Source: Ascoidea asiatica JCM 7603 (lineage: Eukaryota; Fungi; Ascomycota). From it: DNA of 64,000 nucleotides. The notes under the pieces were generated by a model. The model did not search any database. It was not told where the DNA came from and saw only the letters and a program-made list of their open reading frames with translations. The stretch spans positions 198,315 through 262,314 of the forward strand of contig BCKQ01000006.1 in NCBI GenBank assembly GCA_001600695.1, read 5' to 3'. Position 1 is the first letter of the stretch, and every line of letters begins with the position of its first letter. Below are positions 54,561-62,385 of the stretch, in pieces. A program made the translations under genes and the position numbers.

Positions 54561-55020
54561 TCCTTCAGACTTGGAAAAGCACCAGGGAAACTATCACTCT
54601 AATAATAATACAATAACAATAATAATAATAATTAATATATGTGATATAATAAAATATAGGTAGTAAATCAAGAAATAAATAAATATTAAATCAATCAACA
54701 ATAAATCAATAATAAATCAATAATAAATCAATAAATCAACAAACCATAAACCATTAATACTACTACTAATACTAATAAAAATACTAATATATCCCCAGTT
54801 CACTTTCATTCTCCATCTCAACCTCATTCACATTTACATGTATTATTAATCCATATCAATATATTCATAAATTCATTAATCGTATATATTCAATCATATA
54901 TACAGATATATATACAAATATATATATTTAAATATATAACATATAATATTAGCTAGATATAACAATCACAATCACAAACATAACTATAATATAATAATAA
55001 TTCTATAATCAATATATAAA

Positions 55021-57504
55021 ATGGAAATATCAAATTCAATACCTGAAAGAAGACTAAGGAATAGAAATTCATCTCCAATGAGTTCAATAAAACTAAATAA
55101 TAAATCTTCTATAAGGAATAACAGTAATAGCAATACTAATAACACTAAAAAACAATTTAAATCCTCCAAATCCCTAAATATTCATCATAGTCAATCAACT
55201 CTACAAAATTTAGATAATTATTCAGATTCAAACTTATCTTCAAATAGTATTAATAACAATAATAACTCTATTCCTGATAGTAAATCAACTAATAGTAACA
55301 GTATTAATAACACCAATATCAATTCAAGTAATAAAAGTAATAGCGCCAATTCAAATTCCATCAATAGCAACAACAACAACAATATTAAAATAAAAAATCC
55401 AAATAAAAGAAAATCAATAATTTATAATGATAGATTCATACCTGTAAGAAATGGTATAAATTTACAAGCTGCTTATTCTTTAAACAATAATGATGATACT
55501 TTATTAATATCTTCTTTATCAAATTCAAATTTAAATATAAATAATCTTTTATCTAATTCAAACAGCAATAATACAAATAACCCAAATAATACTAATAATA
55601 TAAACGCCAATATAAATAATAACAATAATAACAATAATAATGATATATTCAATACAAATTTAAATCAAAATCAAAATATAAATATTCCAATAAATAATAT
55701 AGTAAATAATGATAATAATTTCATCTATAATCCAAATAATAATCATAACAACAATGACAATAATAACAATAATAACAACAGTAGTAATTTAAATGATATT
55801 GAATTGAAAAGAGAAGAAGAAGCAAATTTAACCTTTTCAAATATTTTAAAAAATGAATTATTCGGTGACGATGTACCAAATGCAAATTTAAATTCATTCT
55901 CAAGACCTTCAACTTCAAATTCAAATTCAAATATAAATATAAATTCAATTACAAATCCATTATCAAACTCAATATCAAATTCAAATCTAAATTTCAACTC
56001 AAATATAGATAATTTAGATAATATAAATAATCTAAATAATAATATGGATAATAGAAATTTAATTCATTCAAATTCTATACATTCTTTAAATAATCTCAAT
56101 AATTCTCCAATAATACTACAAAGATCTCCAACTTCAATCCATCATCATCATCATCATCCAAGAAATCATTCAAGAAATAATAATGATATAAATAATGATA
56201 TAAATGATATAATTAATAATGATATAATAAATGATGATAATGATAATCGTACTCCAAATCATAACAATTCAAATAATTCTCCAAATTCTTCAATGCTATT
56301 CAATAATACAACCACAACTATTGATTTCTTAAATAGAACTCCAACAAGAAGATCAAATTCAAATTTATTCTCTTTTCAATCTTCTCCAACAAAATCTTTA
56401 AGATTAAACTCTTCAAATATTAATAATTTGAATATCTCAAATCAATATTATTCCTTATCACCAATGAGATCCGATTCTCAAAGATTATTATTATCTCCAA
56501 AAAAAAAACAAAGATTTATTTCAAAAATTCCATATAAAGTACTTGATGCTCCGGATTTAATTGATGATTTTTATTTAAATTTAATAGATTGGAGTTCAAA
56601 AGATATTTTAGCTGTTGGTTTAGGTTCTTCCGTTTATTTATGGAATTCAATCTCAAGCTCAGTAAATGAATTATGTAATTTAAGTAATAATAATGATAAT
56701 AACAGTAGTAATAATGTAACTTCAATAAGTTGGATTGGAGCTGGAACTCATTTAGCTGTTGGTTCAAATAATGGTTCTGTTGCAATTTGGGATGTAAAAA
56801 CTTGTAAATGTACAAGAACAATGACCGGTCATACTTCAAGAACTGCTTCTTTATCTTGGAATGAGCATATTTTGACTTCAGGTTCAAGAGATAGAACTAT
56901 TTTACATAGAGATGTTAGAGTTCCTGAACATTATATTAAAAAAATTAAAGAACATAAACAAGAAGTTTGTGGTTTAAAATGGAATATTGATGAAAATAAA
57001 TTAGCTTCTGGTGGTAATGATAATAAATTATTTATTTGGGATGGTTTAAATTCAAAACCAATTTATAAAATTTCTGATCATAAAGCTGCTGTAAAAGCAA
57101 TTTCTTGGTCTCCACATCAAAGGGGTATTTTAGCTTCTGGTGGTGGTACCGCAGATAGAAAAATTAAAATTTGGAATACTTTAAATGGTAATAAATTAAA
57201 TGATATAGATACTGGTTCTCAAGTTTGTAATTTAATTTGGTCCAAAAATTCAAATGAAATTGTTAGTACTCATGGTTATTCAAAGAATCAAATAATAATT
57301 TGGAAATATCCAAATATGCAACAAGTTGCTTCTTTAACTGGTCATACTTCAAGAGTTTTATATCTAGCAATGAGTCTTGATGGTCAAACTATTGTAACTG
57401 GTGCTGGCGATGAAACTTTAAGATTTTGGAATGTATTTGAAAAAAATAAAAAAAATGATACTCCTTCATCTTTATTACTGGATTCTTTTTTACAATTACG
57501 ATAA
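55021..57504 (+). CDS. CDH1: APC/C activator Cdh1 (WD40)
   Basis: C-box DRFIP, PYKVLDAP-L-DDFYLNLIDWS, HKQEVCGLKW, GAGDETLRFW, terminal LR tail. Confidence 0.96.
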   Translation: MEISNSIPERRLRNRNSSPMSSIKLNNKSSIRNNSNSNTNNTKKQFKSSKSLNIHHSQSTLQNLDNYSDSNLSSNSINNNNNSIPDSKSTNSNSINNTNINSSNKSNSANSNSINSNNNNNIKIKNPNKRKSIIYNDRFIPVRNGINLQAAYSLNNNDDTLLISSLSNSNLNINNLLSNSNSNNTNNPNNTNNINANINNNNNNNNNDIFNTNLNQNQNINIPINNIVNNDNNFIYNPNNNHNNNDNNNNNNNSSNLNDIELKREEEANLTFSNILKNELFGDDVPNANLNSFSRPSTSNSNSNININSITNPLSNSISNSNLNFNSNIDNLDNINNLNNNMDNRNLIHSNSIHSLNNLNNSPIILQRSPTSIHHHHHHPRNHSRNNNDINNDINDIINNDIINDDNDNRTPNHNNSNNSPNSSMLFNNTTTTIDFLNRTPTRRSNSNLFSFQSSPTKSLRLNSSNINNLNISNQYYSLSPMRSDSQRLLLSPKKKQRFISKIPYKVLDAPDLIDDFYLNLIDWSSKDILAVGLGSSVYLWNSISSSVNELCNLSNNNDNNSSNNVTSISWIGAGTHLAVGSNNGSVAIWDVKTCKCTRTMTGHTSRTASLSWNEHILTSGSRDRTILHRDVRVPEHYIKKIKEHKQEVCGLKWNIDENKLASGGNDNKLFIWDGLNSKPIYKISDHKAAVKAISWSPHQRGILASGGGTADRKIKIWNTLNGNKLNDIDTGSQVCNLIWSKNSNEIVSTHGYSKNQIIIWKYPNMQQVASLTGHTSRVLYLAMSLDGQTIVTGAGDETLRFWNVFEKNKKNDTPSSLLLDSFLQLR

Positions 57505-57916
57505 TTTTATCATCATTTGATTATTATTTCAATAATCTTTTTTTCTGTTTTATGTTATATGTATATCATTGCTATTAGGGTTTTCAGTGGGTTATTAATT
57601 TGGTCAAGATTAAATCAAATTAAATTACAAGTTATTTGGATGTTTTAGAAATATAAATTTTAGAGTCATATATTTCTTATTGTGGTTTATTTTATTATTA
57701 AACTTTTTTTTACTTCATTAATTTCTGCTTTTCTTAAATTGCTTTACTTTTTTATCAAATTTTATAGATTTCTTTCTATTGCTTTCGTTTTTTTTTCAAA
57801 TTCTTATTCTTTGTTTATTTTTATTTATTTATCTTTTCAATTGGGTTAGTTAAAGAAAATCAAGCTATCCCTAGTGTACATTATAGCTATTTAAAAACTT
57901 ATTAAACTGATCTAAG

Positions 57917-58188
57917 CTAATAGAAAACTTGTTAGTTAGTTATTGGTATTTTTTTAAAAAGAATTCATATTTAAAATATAAAAAAAAAATATTATAGTAA
58001 AGAATAATCTAGCTTAAACTTAATAAATAATCTAATAATTTAAATTAATTAAATTTATTCAATATATCAGAAATAGTTGACGTTTTTCAATCATTAGTTT
58101 CTGAAAGACTAATCGATTTTTAATCATCATCATTGAATAAATTAAAACTTATTTATTGAGAAATAATTATATTAAAAGAAATACATAC
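57917..58188 (-). other. Spliceosomal intron of a probably non-coding snoRNA host gene
   Basis: GTATGT donor 58188-58183, TAACTAAC branch 57938-57931, TAG acceptor ending 57917; contains the snoRNA. Confidence 0.7.
58052..58143 (-). ncRNA. Box C/D snoRNA guiding LSU rRNA 2'-O-methylation
   Basis: C box ATGATGA (58133-58127), D' CAGA (58103-58100), C' TGATTGA (58093-58087), D CTGA (58070-58067); 12-bp perfect flanking inverted repeat; guide TCGATTAGTCTTT complementary to conserved LSU AAAGACUAAUCGA. Confidence 0.88.
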
Positions 58189-58325
58189 TAATTCATATCA
58201 AAGTTCTCAATGATAATATCCATTTAATGAAAAATCCAAATGGCTTTCCAGATATATTCAAAAAATGAATAAAATATTGATTTGAATGATAATTTGGAAA
58301 TAAAAAGTGAGAAATAAATTATGTT

Positions 58326-58400
58326 TGAAAATTTTTCTTTTATAGTAATTTTAACGTGAGTTAAGTAAGTAAAATGGCGAGGAAATAAATAATAGGGCTA
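58326..58400 (-). promoter_or_regulatory. Putative snoRNA-host promoter (Tbf1-like site, TATA, RRPE)
   Basis: TAGCCCTA 58400-58393, TATAAAA 58344-58338, TGAAAATTTTT 58326-58336. Confidence 0.55.
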
Positions 58401-58666
58401 AAAACTGTCCTAAAAAAGAATATAATCTCAATGAATTGGTTCATTTCAATCGAAATAATCGAATCTAAATTCAAAATTTTCAGATAAGAAAGATAGTCAT
58501 TTAAATGAATAATCCTGAAATTATTTACAGATTGATAAGATAATCATGGCAGAGAAAAGAAAAGATGGTAGTTAAAGCCAATTCATTTATATTTATATTT
58601 ATATTCATATTAAAAGGTATATAATTTGTATAAAAGAAATAGATTAAACGATTTTATTAAAATAAT

Positions 58667-59623
58667 TTAAATGTAACCAATTTTGTTTGCAACATCTAAA
58701 GCATCAAAATCAGCAGTTAATCTAACATAAGCTTTTTTAGTACCATTTGGTCTAATTAAAGTATTAACTTTTAAAGTATCAACTTCATATAAATCTTTAA
58801 TAGCTTTTTTAATTTGATGTTTATTTGATTTAATATCAACTTGAAATACTAAAGTATTTGAATCTTCAATTTTTTTCATTGCAGTTTCAGAAACAATTGG
58901 AGCAATTATAACTTTATAAGAATCAAGTCTATTATAATGTGGTACAGAGATTCTAGCATATTTTGGATTTCTTTGTAATTTTAAAGTTTTTGGTAAATTA
59001 AAAGTTGTTGAAGTTCTAACTTTAGTTGCAATTTTTGAATTTAAACCTTTTGCAACTGCTTTTTTAGCAGATTGAGCTTTAGAAATTTTAGCTATTATTG
59101 AACAAAAAAAAGAAAAAGAAGTTAGTTAAAGTTACATTTTTGAATATATTTTACTATTGGAAAATGAATAATAAAGGTAATAACTAATAAGCCTACAATT
59201 TTAAAGAATATTTCATTTGAATATTATTTTACTTTTAGAAATTCAATAAGTACTAATAAATAAATTATAAGTAAATTATGAATAAATTTCAACTAAAATC
59301 AATATCAAAAGTGATTTACCAAGAAAAGAGATAAAGCACTATATAAGAACTTAATCACAGAGATATCTTAATAAAGGATATAAATCATTTCTAAAGAAGA
59401 AAACCTACAATAAATGACATTTTCATATGCCTAGATAATCTTCTTTTAAATACCCTATTTAAATCTTCTTTTAGGTTAAAATTGATATTGATATTGATAT
59501 TGATAATAAAGTAATAAAATAATAAAATATTCTTAATCATAAGGACTTAATTAGTTATACCATTTTCATTTCATTTTTCATTCAAATTATATTCATGATT
59601 GAACACATACTTGCTGGAGCCAT
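58667..59623 (-). CDS. RPL25: 60S ribosomal protein uL23; exons 59623-59611 and 59091-58667 (519-nt intron)
   Basis: ATGGCTCCAGCAA|GTATGT, TAACTAAC at 59128-59121, TAG at 59092; product [17 protein letters not shown]...[18 protein letters not shown]...KIGYI, 145 aa. Confidence 0.96.
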
Positions 59624-59757
59624 TACTGATTAATTTTGATGAATATTTTACCTTTATTAGATCTTGATTACTCTAGAAATTAAAATATTTTTTTAAATTA
59701 ATAAATCAATTTAATAATTTTAAATTTCTTCAATACAAAAATTGACTTTTGGCAATA

Positions 59758-59948
59758 TGAAAAATTTAAAACTGGAATTTGAGATCCGGAAAATAAAAGT
59801 CCGCATCTGGATATTTTACACGGAAAATAAAACCAATTTTGTTTACAAGTTACCCGGTTTAAAAAGTTTATTGGTCAGGTGAGCAGAAATAAGTGTGGGT
59901 TTATTGATCACGTCTTTATGATAAGGGCTTTTATATTGCTTTAGGGCT
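59758..59948. promoter_or_regulatory. RPL25 promoter elements
   Basis: RRPE TGAAAAATTT at 59758, CGGAAAATAAAA twice (59787, 59821), TTACCCGG (Reb1-like) at 59850, TAAGGGCT 59922 and TTAGGGCT 59941 (Tbf1-like). Confidence 0.55.
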
Positions 59949-60600
59949 CATAATACGGTTATCGGTTAACTGCCGGAATTCATATTTGATTTGAAATTTA
60001 ATCAGAAATTTCAATGAAGGTTATTTTAATAGTAAAAGCATGAAAAGATTGATGATCGGAATAAAAAGATTTTGGGAATCGAATGGACACCAGGACTGAA
60101 AGCAGCATTCTCACTAGTTTCTCAGTAGTTTGATTGCATTTCAATCCAATGAAGTCATCCAGTTTGGCTCTCAATTGTTTCTCGGAGCTACAAACTCACT
60201 TTCAATCATTGACAACTACCTGAAAACAAAGAAGATAAATCCCAATCAAAACTGTGCCCGGGACTTTTTCAATTTCAATTTGCTTCTCTTTACTTTTAAG
60301 TGAAGTCTCTTCAAATTCTGCGTTTTTTCAATGATTTTTGTGTTTTTGCGTAAGTGAAAAGGTACTAAGTGCACGGAAATGTTTTTCCACTGTCAAATTA
60401 TGACCCGCGGATCATATTTATCCGTATATAATGTAAACAAACGCGAAAAGAAACAATGAAATCCATGAAAAACTCCAAAAACGCCAAAATTTAGATCAAA
60501 ACCCTTTTTTTTTGATTTCATGGGAATTGAAAAAGCCTCTTTAATTAATCAATTTGATTTCTAAATAATCAGTTAAAACGAGATAATTTAAAATAGTTTA

Positions 60601-62385
60601 ATGTCTTCAAATATTAATTCAAATAAACATAAATTAAGTAATTTTTTAAGAGGTCATAATGCTTCAATCACATCTCAAGAAATTTTTTATTTTCCATCAA
60701 TAAATTTAAAAAATAATCCATTATTACCATATTTAATTTCTGGTGATGAAATTGGTAAAATTATAATTTGGAATCTTTCAAATTTTAGACCAATTTCAAT
60801 ATTTTATTTAAATGCAAAGAAGAATAATAAGGAAAAAGATGGATCTAATTCAGTAATTTCTTTTAAACAATTAGGTATCTCAATTAATAAAAATATAATT
60901 ATAAATGAAAATTTATTTGGGTTCTTCACTATTCAATCAAGAAATAATAACTTAAATTTTTATAAAATCAATTTCAATCAATTCTTCAATTCAGTTAATT
61001 CTTTAAGTACTTTAAGTCTTTCAAGTAATAGAAATGTAACTTTAAATCCTCCAATTTTAATATATTCATATCCTTTAAATACTTTAAATTTTTGTAATAT
61101 TGATATTTTTAATAATCTTTTATCAACTATAAATTCATTAAATGACTCAAATTTTAATGTTCTAAAGATTTCAAAAAATTATAATGAAAACATTAAAGAT
61201 GATATCAAACTTGATATGATTCATGTTAATATAAATCCATTAATCTTAATTGAAAAAAATAATCTATTAAATAAATTTAAATTAGATCTTAAATCTAAAT
61301 TAACTTCATCAAATGCTTCAACCTCAACTTCAACTACAACTACAACTAATGATAAGAAAGATAAACTATCTTTAGGTATAATGATGAAAATATTATGGAT
61401 ATCAAATGAAATCTTATACATTGGTTATGAAAGTGGTCATATTATATCATATTATATCCCAAATAATAATCCATTATCCAACTTTAATGAAAATGAATCA
61501 ATAGATAATTTCAATCAATTAATTAAAGATTTAAATATTCCAATTGATGATTTAAAAGAAAATTATTTTAATAAGAATACTGAATTTGATCTATTAAAAA
61601 AAATTAATTTTAATAATAAAAATTCAACTTTAATTTCAAATATTCAAATTATTTCAATAAATTCATTACATTATCCAAATCCAATATTAGAATTAAAATT
61701 AGATTCTAAAAATAATTTAATTTATTCATCTTCTGCAAGTTCTAAATTTATCATTCATGATATTCCTTCAATTAAAAATTCTGATAACTTAAATAACTTA
61801 ATTATAAACTCAGATACTAATAATATTTTATCTTTCAAATTAAAAGGTATTTCCTCAATCTTTGTAACAAATGATAATGAGATTGTCATAACTACTTGGG
61901 AAGGTATCATAAGAATATTTAAACTTACTAATACTAATGAAACTGAAACTGAAACTAAAATCAAATATGATTTAATTGAAATTGGTAAAATTTCAAAAGA
62001 TAAACCAAGAATTATTAAAGAATTCACTTCTAATCCACATGATAAAGATATTTTAAAAAATCAAAAATCTTTAAAAAGAGTTAAATCGGATATTGTTAGA
62101 ATGACTTTTATTTTCAATAATATTCTAGAATTTAATAATAATAGTAATTATATCACAACTATAAAGTCGTTCATTGATCAACAGAAAAAGTCCATTGAAT
62201 CTATTAAACCCATTGACTCTAGCGACTCTAATGATTCTAATGAAATCAAGGATATCGAGATAGTTAATAAAAGCAATTTAAATAAATCTTTGATATTAAT
62301 TAATTCAAAGAAAGAAAATCAATTAATAAAAGAAAAATTAATAATCATTGGTTTTGATGATGGTCGTATTGGAATTTATAAATAA
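60601..62385 (+). CDS. ASA1: ASTRA-associated WD40 protein
   Basis: LRGHNASIT, LISGDExGxIIIW, NTLNFC, GIMMKI, IGYESGH, GFDDGRIGIY. Confidence 0.82.
   Translation: MSSNINSNKHKLSNFLRGHNASITSQEIFYFPSINLKNNPLLPYLISGDEIGKIIIWNLSNFRPISIFYLNAKKNNKEKDGSNSVISFKQLGISINKNIIINENLFGFFTIQSRNNNLNFYKINFNQFFNSVNSLSTLSLSSNRNVTLNPPILIYSYPLNTLNFCNIDIFNNLLSTINSLNDSNFNVLKISKNYNENIKDDIKLDMIHVNINPLILIEKNNLLNKFKLDLKSKLTSSNASTSTSTTTTTNDKKDKLSLGIMMKILWISNEILYIGYESGHIISYYIPNNNPLSNFNENESIDNFNQLIKDLNIPIDDLKENYFNKNTEFDLLKKINFNNKNSTLISNIQIISINSLHYPNPILELKLDSKNNLIYSSSASSKFIIHDIPSIKNSDNLNNLIINSDTNNILSFKLKGISSIFVTNDNEIVITTWEGIIRIFKLTNTNETETETKIKYDLIEIGKISKDKPRIIKEFTSNPHDKDILKNQKSLKRVKSDIVRMTFIFNNILEFNNNSNYITTIKSFIDQQKKSIESIKPIDSSDSNDSNEIKDIEIVNKSNLNKSLILINSKKENQLIKEKLIIIGFDDGRIGIYK

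What the first reader, a model, noticed from the sequence alone, without database searches (positions are those of the whole stretch)
57917..58400. Hidden non-coding gene: intron-hosted box C/D snoRNA with its own promoter and a possibly unrecorded rRNA target
Seen: on the minus strand between CDH1 and RPL25 there is a Tbf1-like/TATA/RRPE promoter, then a short exon and a GTATGT donor (58188). A complete C/D'/C'/D snoRNA follows, closed by a perfect 12-bp stem (AATTTATTCAAT/ATTGAATAAATT), then a TAACTAAC branch point and a TAG acceptor (57917). The D' guide pairs 13-14 nt with LSU GAAAGACUAAUCGA. By the established +5 rule the target is the last A of AAAGA, about A917 in S. cerevisiae numbering (my count). 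That lies next to the snR60 site Gm908 and is not among the S. cerevisiae 25S methylation sites I recall. The spliced exons give at most a 26-aa ORF (MDIIIENFDMNYLDQFNKFLNSYNVH). Inference: a dedicated non-coding host whose only product is a snoRNA that is lineage-restricted or lost in S. cerevisiae.
Basis: partly seen in the sequence, partly recalled or inferred. Interest (0 to 1): 0.8.

Follow-up and report, generated by a model that had tools for sequence, protein, structure and literature searches.

The report
Intron-hosted CD39-family box C/D snoRNA
Downstream of RPL25 in a very AT-rich budding yeast lies a well-formed rRNA-methylation guide RNA inside the apparent intron of a short non-coding transcript; it belongs to the known fungal CD39/snR83 family, which S. 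cerevisiae lacks, so the reading is correct but ordinary.

Summary
The anatomy is confirmed at the stated coordinates. On the minus strand a 92-nt box C/D snoRNA (58143-58052) has C AUGAUGA, D' CAGA, C' UGAUUGA, D CUGA and a perfect 12-bp terminal stem. It lies between GTATGT (58188) and TAACTAAC/TAG (57938-57917). The D' guide pairs 13 nt with the universally conserved LSU segment AAAGACUAAUCGA, and the +5 rule selects the S. cerevisiae A917 equivalent.

The target is not unrecorded. N. crassa CD39 carries the same antisense core in the same register against a non-canonical NAGA D' box and is assigned 26S-Am897. A constant +20 offset makes that Sc-A917. Its S. pombe counterpart snR83 guides 25S Am949, a site mapped by primer extension. 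CD39 occurs in Candida species but not in S. cerevisiae.

Ascomycete contigs from metagenomes share an invariant 5' half, including CAGA. The D guide differs and remains orphan. Non-coding intronic hosts are the norm in this genome: its snR60 orthologue is built the same way.

Verdict: a new member of a known family, of low novelty. This scan had already found the same host arrangement elsewhere in this genome (s1-608938).

The parts
58052..58143 (-). Box C/D snoRNA precursor unit of 92 nt including the 12-bp terminal stem. The mature RNA is probably about 75-90 nt.
   Evidence: Read directly. Unique C/D plus stem architecture in the window. Stem of at least 13 bp in 1 of 200 shuffles. Inverted repeat I1.
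58124..58130 (-). C box AUGAUGA. An overlapping alternative register lies at 58133-58127.
   Evidence: invariant in alignment A1
58104..58116 (-). D' antisense element UCGAUUAGUCUUU. It is 13 nt long and complementary to LSU AAAGACUAAUCGA. Position +5 selects the A equivalent to S. cerevisiae 25S A917.
   Evidence: Same core and register as N. crassa CD39, which targets 26S-Am897. Offset +20 to S. cerevisiae. Invariant in A1. Part of the target segment (LSU 912-922; 10 of the 13 paired nt) is confirmed indirectly in this species by the overlapping snR60 guide.
58100..58103 (-). Non-canonical D' box CAGA
   Evidence: Identical CAGA in five ascomycete relatives. AAGA in N. crassa CD39.
58087..58093 (-). 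Degenerate C' box UGAUUGA, 6 nt after D'
   Evidence: aligned with UGGUGA of the relatives
58071..58086 (-). D-box guide AAAACGUCAACUAUUU. Its target is unknown (orphan here). It is not shared with N. crassa CD39 or the metagenomic relatives.
   Evidence: The species' own rRNA is not available.
58067..58070 (-). D box CUGA
57917..58188 (-). Predicted 272-nt intron: GTATGT donor, TAACTAAC(TAAC) branch point at 57938-57931, TAG acceptor at 57919-57917
   Evidence: One of only two such signal sets in the window; the other is the RPL25 intron, which has the same AACTAAC branch motif. Splicing itself was not shown.
58189..58300 (-). Exon 1 of the host. The 5' end is unknown and the start given is approximate. 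It contains an ATG at 58223-58221. Unspliced, the ORF stops at a TAG that spans the donor.
57650..57916 (-). Exon 2 of the host. The 3' end is unknown and approximate. The micro-ORF stops at 57873-57871. There is no minus-strand ORF of 40 aa or more between CDH1 and RPL25.
58327..58399 (-). Candidate promoter: Tbf1-like AGCCCTA (58399-58393), TATAAAAG (58344-58337), RRPE-like AAAAATTTTC (58336-58327)
   Evidence: The same order of motifs lies upstream of this genome's snR60 host and of RPL25. The literature on Tbf1/Stb3 snoRNA promoters agrees. The core motif is not enriched, so this is inference only.

Best explanation
This is the orthologue, in an extremely AT-rich budding yeast whose closest RPL25 is that of Ascoidea rubescens, of the fungal box C/D snoRNA family CD39. 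That family includes N. crassa CD39, S. pombe snR83 and Candida CD39.

Shown from sequence: the host unit lies just downstream of RPL25. It has exon 1, a 272-nt intron with GTATGT, a TAACTAAC branch point and a TAG acceptor, and exon 2 with no meaningful ORF.

Inferred mechanism, following the established pathway for intronic yeast snoRNAs:
1. RNA polymerase II transcribes the short non-coding host.
2. The 12-bp terminal stem brings the C and D boxes together, so that Snu13, Nop56, Nop58 and Nop1 (fibrillarin) assemble on the intron.
3. After splicing and debranching, exonucleases trim the lariat down to the snoRNP.
4. The 13-nt D' antisense element pairs with LSU rRNA AAAGACUAAUCGA. Fibrillarin then 2'-O-methylates the A opposite the fifth nucleotide upstream of the CAGA D' box. 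That A is the equivalent of S. cerevisiae A917, N. crassa A897 and S. pombe A949.

The D guide has no identified target and is probably lineage-specific or non-functional.
For: 1. Complete C/D'/C'/D architecture with a unique 12-bp (plus one G.U) terminal stem.
2. The antisense core CGAUUAGUCUU (11 nt) sits in the same register against an NAGA-type D' box as in N. crassa CD39 (EU780962). That snoRNA is assigned 26S-Am897 with 13/0 pairing via D' and is intronic.
3. The N. crassa to S. cerevisiae offset is +20 at A797/A817, A856/A876 and G888/G908, so Am897 = A917.
4. The S. pombe homologue snR83 guides 25S Am949, listed among the sites identified by dNTP-dependent primer extension.
5. CD39 is present in all Candida species examined, is intronic and syntenic there, and is absent from S. 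cerevisiae.
6. Five ascomycete metagenome relatives share an invariant C box, spacer, guide and CAGA with the window RNA.
7. The target string is a universal 28S primer site across eukaryotes. This genome's own snR60 guide (Rfam, 58.4 bits) overlaps it, which shows indirectly that the species' LSU contains GAAAGACUAAU.
8. The intron signals match the RPL25 intron of the same window. The snR60 host in this genome has the same intronic, non-coding layout and promoter motif order.
Against: The species' rDNA is not in the assembly, so pairing with its own rRNA is only inferred.

No CD39 copy lies next to RPL25 in A. rubescens, W. ciferrii or S. crataegensis, so orthology is not backed by synteny. 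In Candida the host is a different gene, orf19.3559.

The 3' half (D'-C' spacer and D guide) is not conserved with the relatives.

The Tbf1-like motif is at chance frequency in the window.
Confidence: 0.85

Rival explanations
1. The snoRNA does the same job but is not a true CD39 orthologue. The A917-type antisense element was acquired convergently, or transferred onto an unrelated C/D backbone, as happens in snoRNA target switches.
For: The same guide in the same register occurs on clearly different backbones in metagenomic eukaryotes, including an Rfam SNORD36-type snoRNA. The 3' half and the D guide of the window RNA differ from N. crassa CD39 and the ascomycete relatives. There is no synteny with relatives or with Candida. 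Target switches are documented in fungi.
Against: The whole 5' half, including the unpaired spacer upstream of the guide and the unusual CAGA/AAGA D' box, is shared with fungal CD39 sequences. The guide is on D' in all of them. The taxonomic pattern fits: present in Saccharomycotina outside Saccharomycetaceae, in Pezizomycotina and in Taphrinomycotina.
Confidence: 0.15
2. The snoRNA is real but the host has no promoter of its own. Instead it is made from RPL25 read-through transcripts, or from an unspliced precursor processed by endonuclease and exonucleases rather than by splicing.
For: The host lies on the same strand about 480 nt downstream of the RPL25 stop. The Tbf1-like core is not enriched. 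No transcript data are available.
Against: AT-rich yeast-type 3'-end signals follow the RPL25 stop. The order Tbf1-like motif, then TATA and RRPE-like motif, then about 150 nt to GTATGT recurs upstream of this genome's snR60 host. The donor, a doubled ACTAAC branch site and the acceptor bracket the snoRNA. The only other such set in the window is a true intron. CD39 is intronic in N. crassa and Candida.
Confidence: 0.15
3. It is a chance look-alike or a decaying, unexpressed snoRNA relic.
For: The genome is 24% GC, so AT-rich stems and short motifs arise easily. One of 200 shuffles reached a 13-bp stem. The fold z-score is only -1.67. D' and C' are non-consensus.
Against: All four boxes, the spacing, a perfect 12-bp stem and a perfect 13-nt match to a known CD39 target coincide. 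The 5' half is identical to that of expressed fungal family members (N. crassa CD39 was cloned from cDNA). It is a single copy with no paralogue that could act as the functional one.
Confidence: 0.04
4. The host is a protein-coding gene for a 26-aa micropeptide, and the snoRNA is incidental.
For: A spliced ORF of 26 codons exists.
Against: The ORF is short, low-complexity and AT-biased. No conservation could be examined. Non-coding snoRNA hosts are the rule in Candida, S. pombe and this genome.
Confidence: 0.03

Closest known systems
Neurospora crassa Nc CD39 (GenBank EU780962; Liu et al. 2009, PMC2780460)
   Same: The D' antisense core CGAUUAGUCUU lies in the same register next to a non-canonical NAGA D' box. 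The predicted target is the same LSU adenosine (Nc Am897 = Sc A917). It is intron-encoded. It has no S. cerevisiae, plant or human counterpart.
   Different: Nc CD39 is 73 nt with a short terminal stem, D' AAGA, a UGGUUA-type C' and a D guide assigned to 26S-Am375. The window RNA is 92 nt with a 12-bp stem, D' CAGA, a shorter D'-C' spacer and an unrelated, orphan D guide.
Schizosaccharomyces pombe box C/D snR83 (Diao et al. 2014, PMC4138321)
   Same: It is listed as the fission-yeast homologue of Nc CD39's D' function. It guides 25S Am949, a site identified by primer extension and stated to be absent from humans, plants and budding yeast.
   Different: The species is distant. Its name clashes with the unrelated S. 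cerevisiae H/ACA snR83.
Candida CD39 (Mitrovich et al. 2010; Donovan et al. 2016, PMC5033589)
   Same: It is a Saccharomycotina member of the family. It is intronic, present in four Candida-clade species and absent from S. cerevisiae.
   Different: In Candida it lies in an intron 'within orf19.3559' and is syntenic among those species. Here it lies in a separate non-coding host next to RPL25.
snR60 / Z15 (Rfam RF00309)
   Same: It is a C/D snoRNA whose D guide (Gm908) pairs with the overlapping LSU stretch. In this genome it is likewise in an intron of a non-coding host.
   Different: It has a different register and target (G908 and A817). The genuine snR60 of this genome is on another contig (L070:1422-1527, 58.4 bits). 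The window RNA gives no Rfam hit.
UHG-like non-coding snoRNA host genes of fungi
   Same: These are short spliced transcripts without coding potential whose introns carry one C/D snoRNA. The promoter has Tbf1/RRPE-type elements shared with ribosomal-protein genes.
   Different: Nothing distinctive. This host is monocistronic and lies immediately downstream of RPL25.

Membership tests
Box C/D snoRNA | C box RUGAUGA near the 5' end and D box CUGA near the 3' end, brought together by a terminal stem | tested here: met
   AUGAUGA 58130-58124 and CUGA 58070-58067, with a 12-bp perfect stem plus one G.U. Stem of at least 13 bp in 1 of 200 shuffles.
Box C/D snoRNA | Internal D' and C' boxes with suitable spacing | tested here: met
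   D' CAGA lies 20 nt after C. C' UGAUUGA lies 6 nt after D'. The C'-D distance is 16 nt. Both boxes are degenerate, as is common.
Box C/D snoRNA | Antisense element of at least 10 nt immediately upstream of D or D', complementary to rRNA or snRNA | tested here: met
   13 nt against the conserved LSU AAAGACUAAUCGA. Pairing to this species' own rRNA is only indirect, through the overlapping snR60 guide, because the rDNA is not in the assembly.
Box C/D snoRNA | Stable expressed RNA bound by snoRNP proteins | not testable with these tools
CD39 (Nc CD39 / Sp snR83 / Candida CD39) | D' guide directing methylation of the LSU A equivalent to Nc A897 / Sc A917 | tested here: met
   Same core and register as the published Nc CD39 sequence. 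Target assignment and numbering offset.
CD39 (Nc CD39 / Sp snR83 / Candida CD39) | Non-canonical NAGA D' box | tested here: met
   CAGA here and in five ascomycete relatives; AAGA in N. crassa.
CD39 (Nc CD39 / Sp snR83 / Candida CD39) | Sequence similarity beyond boxes and guide | tested here: inconclusive
   The spacer between the C box and the guide is similar (alignment A1). The 3' half is not alignable with confidence. No Candida or S. pombe sequence was at hand.
CD39 (Nc CD39 / Sp snR83 / Candida CD39) | Intron-encoded | tested here: inconclusive
   Canonical donor, branch point and acceptor bracket it. Splicing was not observed.
CD39 (Nc CD39 / Sp snR83 / Candida CD39) | Second (D) guide as in N. 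crassa (26S-Am375) | tested here: not met
   The D guides are unrelated. The D guide also varies among the metagenomic relatives, so it does not define the family.
CD39 (Nc CD39 / Sp snR83 / Candida CD39) | Target adenosine actually 2'-O-methylated | not testable with these tools
   Reported only for S. pombe Am949, by primer extension.
snR60/Z15 (RF00309) | Guides for Sc A817 (D') and G908 (D); match to the Rfam model | tested here: not met
   No Rfam hit at E up to 1 over 55000-61000. The genuine snR60 is at L070:1422-1527.

The most novel reading that the evidence does not exclude
[quoted passage not shown] In metagenomic eukaryote contigs it sits in the same register on at least four other C/D backbones, one of them a SNORD36/snR47-type RNA. 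This would point to an ancient or repeatedly re-invented LSU methylation that animals, land plants and Saccharomycetaceae lost. In addition, the orphan D guide of the window snoRNA might direct a modification specific to this lineage.
Probability: 0.3. Interest if true: 0.35.

Novelty: new member of a known kind. Interest (0 to 1): 0.15.

Why it matters
The finding adds one correctly delimited snoRNA gene and its non-coding host to the annotation of an unannotated, extremely AT-rich yeast. It extends the known range of the CD39 family within Saccharomycotina. It supports the picture that Saccharomycetaceae lost this guide, and presumably the Am917-equivalent methylation, while most other ascomycetes kept it. 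It opens no new question. The modest open points are the orphan D guide, the relocation of the gene next to RPL25, and how widely this LSU methylation occurs outside fungi.

Tried and rejected
- **Rfam.** A permissive scan of 55000-61000 gave no hit. This reflects the lack of a CD39 model, not the lack of a snoRNA, because Rfam finds this genome's snR60.
- **Own rDNA.** I searched the whole assembly for the target string, the sarcin-ricin loop motif and 5.8S and found nothing. An LSU family search failed technically. So no snoscan-type check against the species' own rRNA was possible, and the D guide stays orphan.
- **Paralogues.** None in the genome.
- **Synteny.** The RPL25 neighbourhoods (±10 kb) of A. 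rubescens, W. ciferrii and S. crataegensis contain neither the guide nor any convincing C/D snoRNA.
- **snR60 derivative.** I considered whether this was a derived snR60, since the guides overlap. I rejected that because the true snR60 lies elsewhere.
- **Tbf1 motif.** Enrichment is at the chance level.
- **Literature string search.** Searching for the guide or target string returned only 28S PCR primers.
- **Papers not held.** The Mitrovich 2010 paper and the supplements of the fungal snoRNAome paper are not held.
- **Taxonomy of non-fungal carriers.** Unresolved.
- **Spliced ORF.** The joined 26-aa sequence was not sent to any tool. The exons were translated separately by reference.

Full report
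**Observation.**

- a GTATGT donor at 58188-58183;
- a 92-nt unit at 58143-58052 closed by a perfect 12-bp stem (58143-58132 with 58063-58052, plus one G.U pair);
- C box AUGAUGA (58130-58124);
- a 20-nt spacer ending in AUCGAUUAGUCUUU;
- D' box CAGA (58103-58100);
- a 6-nt linker;
- C' box UGAUUGA (58093-58087);
- a 16-nt D guide;
- D box CUGA (58070-58067);
- a doubled ACTAAC branch site (TAACTAAC at 57938-57931);
- a TAG acceptor ending at 57917.

A simple C/D scanner found this to be the only C...D pair on either strand of the 64-kb window with a terminal stem longer than 8 bp. Only 1 of 200 first-order shuffles reached 13 bp, and 3 reached 10 bp. The repeat finder reports the stem independently, and also a second, outer 12-nt imperfect helix. 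The only two GTATGT..WACTAAC..AG signal sets in the window are the bona fide RPL25 intron (59610 to about 59092, branch TTTAACTAAC) and the one that encloses this snoRNA.

Translated exon by exon by reference, the micro-ORF is as stated: MDIIIENFDMN, then a stop across the donor if unspliced, and LDQFNKFLNSYNVH* in exon 2. I did not send the joined sequence to any tool. No minus-strand ORF of 40 aa or more exists in the interval.

**What it is.**
Rfam gives no hit even at E = 1, but that reflects a gap in the library. The same library recognises this genome's snR60 orthologue on another contig at 58.4 bits (L070:1422-1527).

The decisive evidence is in the literature. Table 1 of Liu et al. 2009 (PMC2780460) lists N. 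crassa CD39. It is 73 nt and intronic. It guides 26S-Am897 through D' with 13/0 pairing and 26S-Am375 through D. Its S. pombe homologue is 'snR83', and it has no homologue in S. cerevisiae, Arabidopsis or human. Additional file 1 of that paper gives the sequence: C box UGAUGA, a guide ending UUCGAUUAGUCUUG, D' box AAGA, and D box CUGA. The window RNA has the same CGAUUAGUCUU core in the same register against CAGA.

The N. crassa numbering is offset by exactly 20 from S. cerevisiae at three flanking sites: A797/A817, A856/A876 and G888/G908 (S. cerevisiae positions of snR60 and snR72).

Diao et al. 2014 (PMC4138321) report S. pombe 25S Am949, guided by snR83. [quoted passage not shown] Donovan et al. 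[quoted passage not shown] Their table places it in an intron 'within orf19.3559', syntenic in four species. Canzler et al. 2018 note that one of the four 'novel' C. albicans snoRNAs of Mitrovich et al. shares its target region with Nc_CD_39.

**Independent sequence support.**
I scanned metagenome contigs for a C box, a 6-16-nt gap, and the guide plus D' box in fixed register. This returned 52 stretches, and many of them are complete C/D snoRNAs. One group (L021, L030, L031, L040, L050 and duplicates) comes from GC-rich contigs. One of these contigs carries an NAD-kinase gene whose nearest Atlas clusters are Ascomycota. Aligned with the window RNA, these share an invariant C box, the spacer, ATCGATTAGTCTTT and the unusual CAGA. 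The D'-C' spacer and the D guide differ (alignment A1).

Other carriers have a canonical CUGA D' box on unrelated backbones. One (L052) reaches the Rfam SNORD36/snR47 gathering score. The antisense element is therefore widespread and sits on several scaffolds.

**Target in this species.**
The rDNA is not in the 20.3-Mb, 71-contig assembly, so pairing with the organism's own 25S cannot be shown directly. Two observations make it very likely. First, the complementary string is a universal eukaryotic 28S primer site. Second, this genome's snR60 D guide (AAAUUAGUCUUUCACCCCUAU before CUGA) overlaps the same rRNA stretch, which implies that the LSU here contains GAAAGACUAAU. The duplex is 13 bp (Sc 913-925). 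A fourteenth pair would need the first nucleotide of the D' box.

**Host gene and promoter.**
The order of motifs is a Tbf1-like AGCCCTA (58399-58393), then TATAAAAG (58344-58337) with AAAAATTTTC (58336-58327), then about 150 nt to the donor. The same order lies upstream of this genome's snR60 host: GCCCTAA, then GAAAATTTTC, then TATAAATA, then about 170 nt to GTATGT. RPL25 has AGCCCTAA followed by TATAAAAG. Published work finds single Tbf1 elements, with Stb3 motifs in D. hansenii, upstream of snoRNA genes in the Candida clade. However, the ARCCCTA core is at chance frequency in the window (5 found, 5.0 expected). The own-promoter reading therefore remains an inference, and RPL25 read-through is not excluded.

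The snR60 host is also an intron of a transcript with no evident ORF. Earlier notes of this scan list many similar cases in this genome, including a followed-up snR47 host judged ordinary. Non-coding intronic hosts are the rule in Candida and S. pombe.

**Synteny.**
The closest RPL25 protein is that of Ascoidea rubescens (81% identity). In A. rubescens a CDH1-like WD40 gene also neighbours RPL25. However, neither A. rubescens, W. ciferrii nor S. crataegensis has the guide or any convincing C/D snoRNA within 10 kb of RPL25. The position beside RPL25 is therefore specific to this lineage. That is in keeping with the known mobility of snoRNA-bearing introns.

**What could not be done.**
Methylation cannot be tested in silico. 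The D guide (58086-58071) has no identifiable target without the species' rRNA. It is not shared with N. crassa CD39 or with the metagenomic relatives.

**Verdict.**
It is wrong that the target might be unrecorded. This is a new member of the known CD39/snR83 family, and its interest is low.

Noticed in passing
L070:1422-1527 (G000 contig C16, about 292388-292493): This is the genome's snR60 orthologue (Rfam RF00309, 58.4 bits). It lies in a GTATGT...TACTAAC...CAG intron of a transcript with no evident ORF. Its D guide reads UUUCACCCC where the S. cerevisiae rRNA complement would be UUUCGCCCC. That implies either a C-to-U change at the 25S C911 equivalent in this species or a tolerated A.C mismatch.
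   Followed up: partly
L052:710-791; L028:210-289; L058:4864-4945; L038:4241-4351; L049:607-716; L022, L025, L023, L048, L056: Metagenomic eukaryote contigs carry the same A917-type D' guide with a canonical CUGA D' box on several unrelated C/D backbones. One of them is an Rfam SNORD36/snR47-type snoRNA. This suggests the modification is not confined to fungi, contrary to published statements. The taxa are unresolved; L058 neighbours a PEX1-like gene.
   Followed up: partly
window 58019-58030 and 58149-58160: A second, outer 12-nt inverted repeat (92% complementary) flanks the terminal stem of the snoRNA, giving a long interrupted helix within the intron. It might aid box C/D juxtaposition or processing, or it might be an AT-rich chance match.
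   Followed up: no
window 58326-58342 and 58466-58482: The two RRPE-like elements upstream of the host (TGAAAATTTTG and GAAAAATTTTC) form a 17-nt, 82% inverted repeat 123 nt apart.
   Followed up: no
window 55021-57504 (+): The CDH1 orthologue is 827 aa long, with very long Asn/Ser-rich low-complexity insertions and a His run ahead of the WD40 domain. This is typical of the genome's extreme AT bias (window GC 24%).
   Followed up: no
L012 (Ascoidea rubescens KV454478.1, 840269-861466): The CDH1-like gene and RPL25 are adjacent and in tandem in A. rubescens, but convergent in the window. This implies a local inversion that included RPL25 since the lineages split.
   Followed up: no
whole assembly G000: No rDNA is present in the 71-contig assembly: no LSU target string, no sarcin-ricin loop motif and no 5.8S. 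Every snoRNA target prediction for this genome therefore rests on other species' rRNA.
   Followed up: partly
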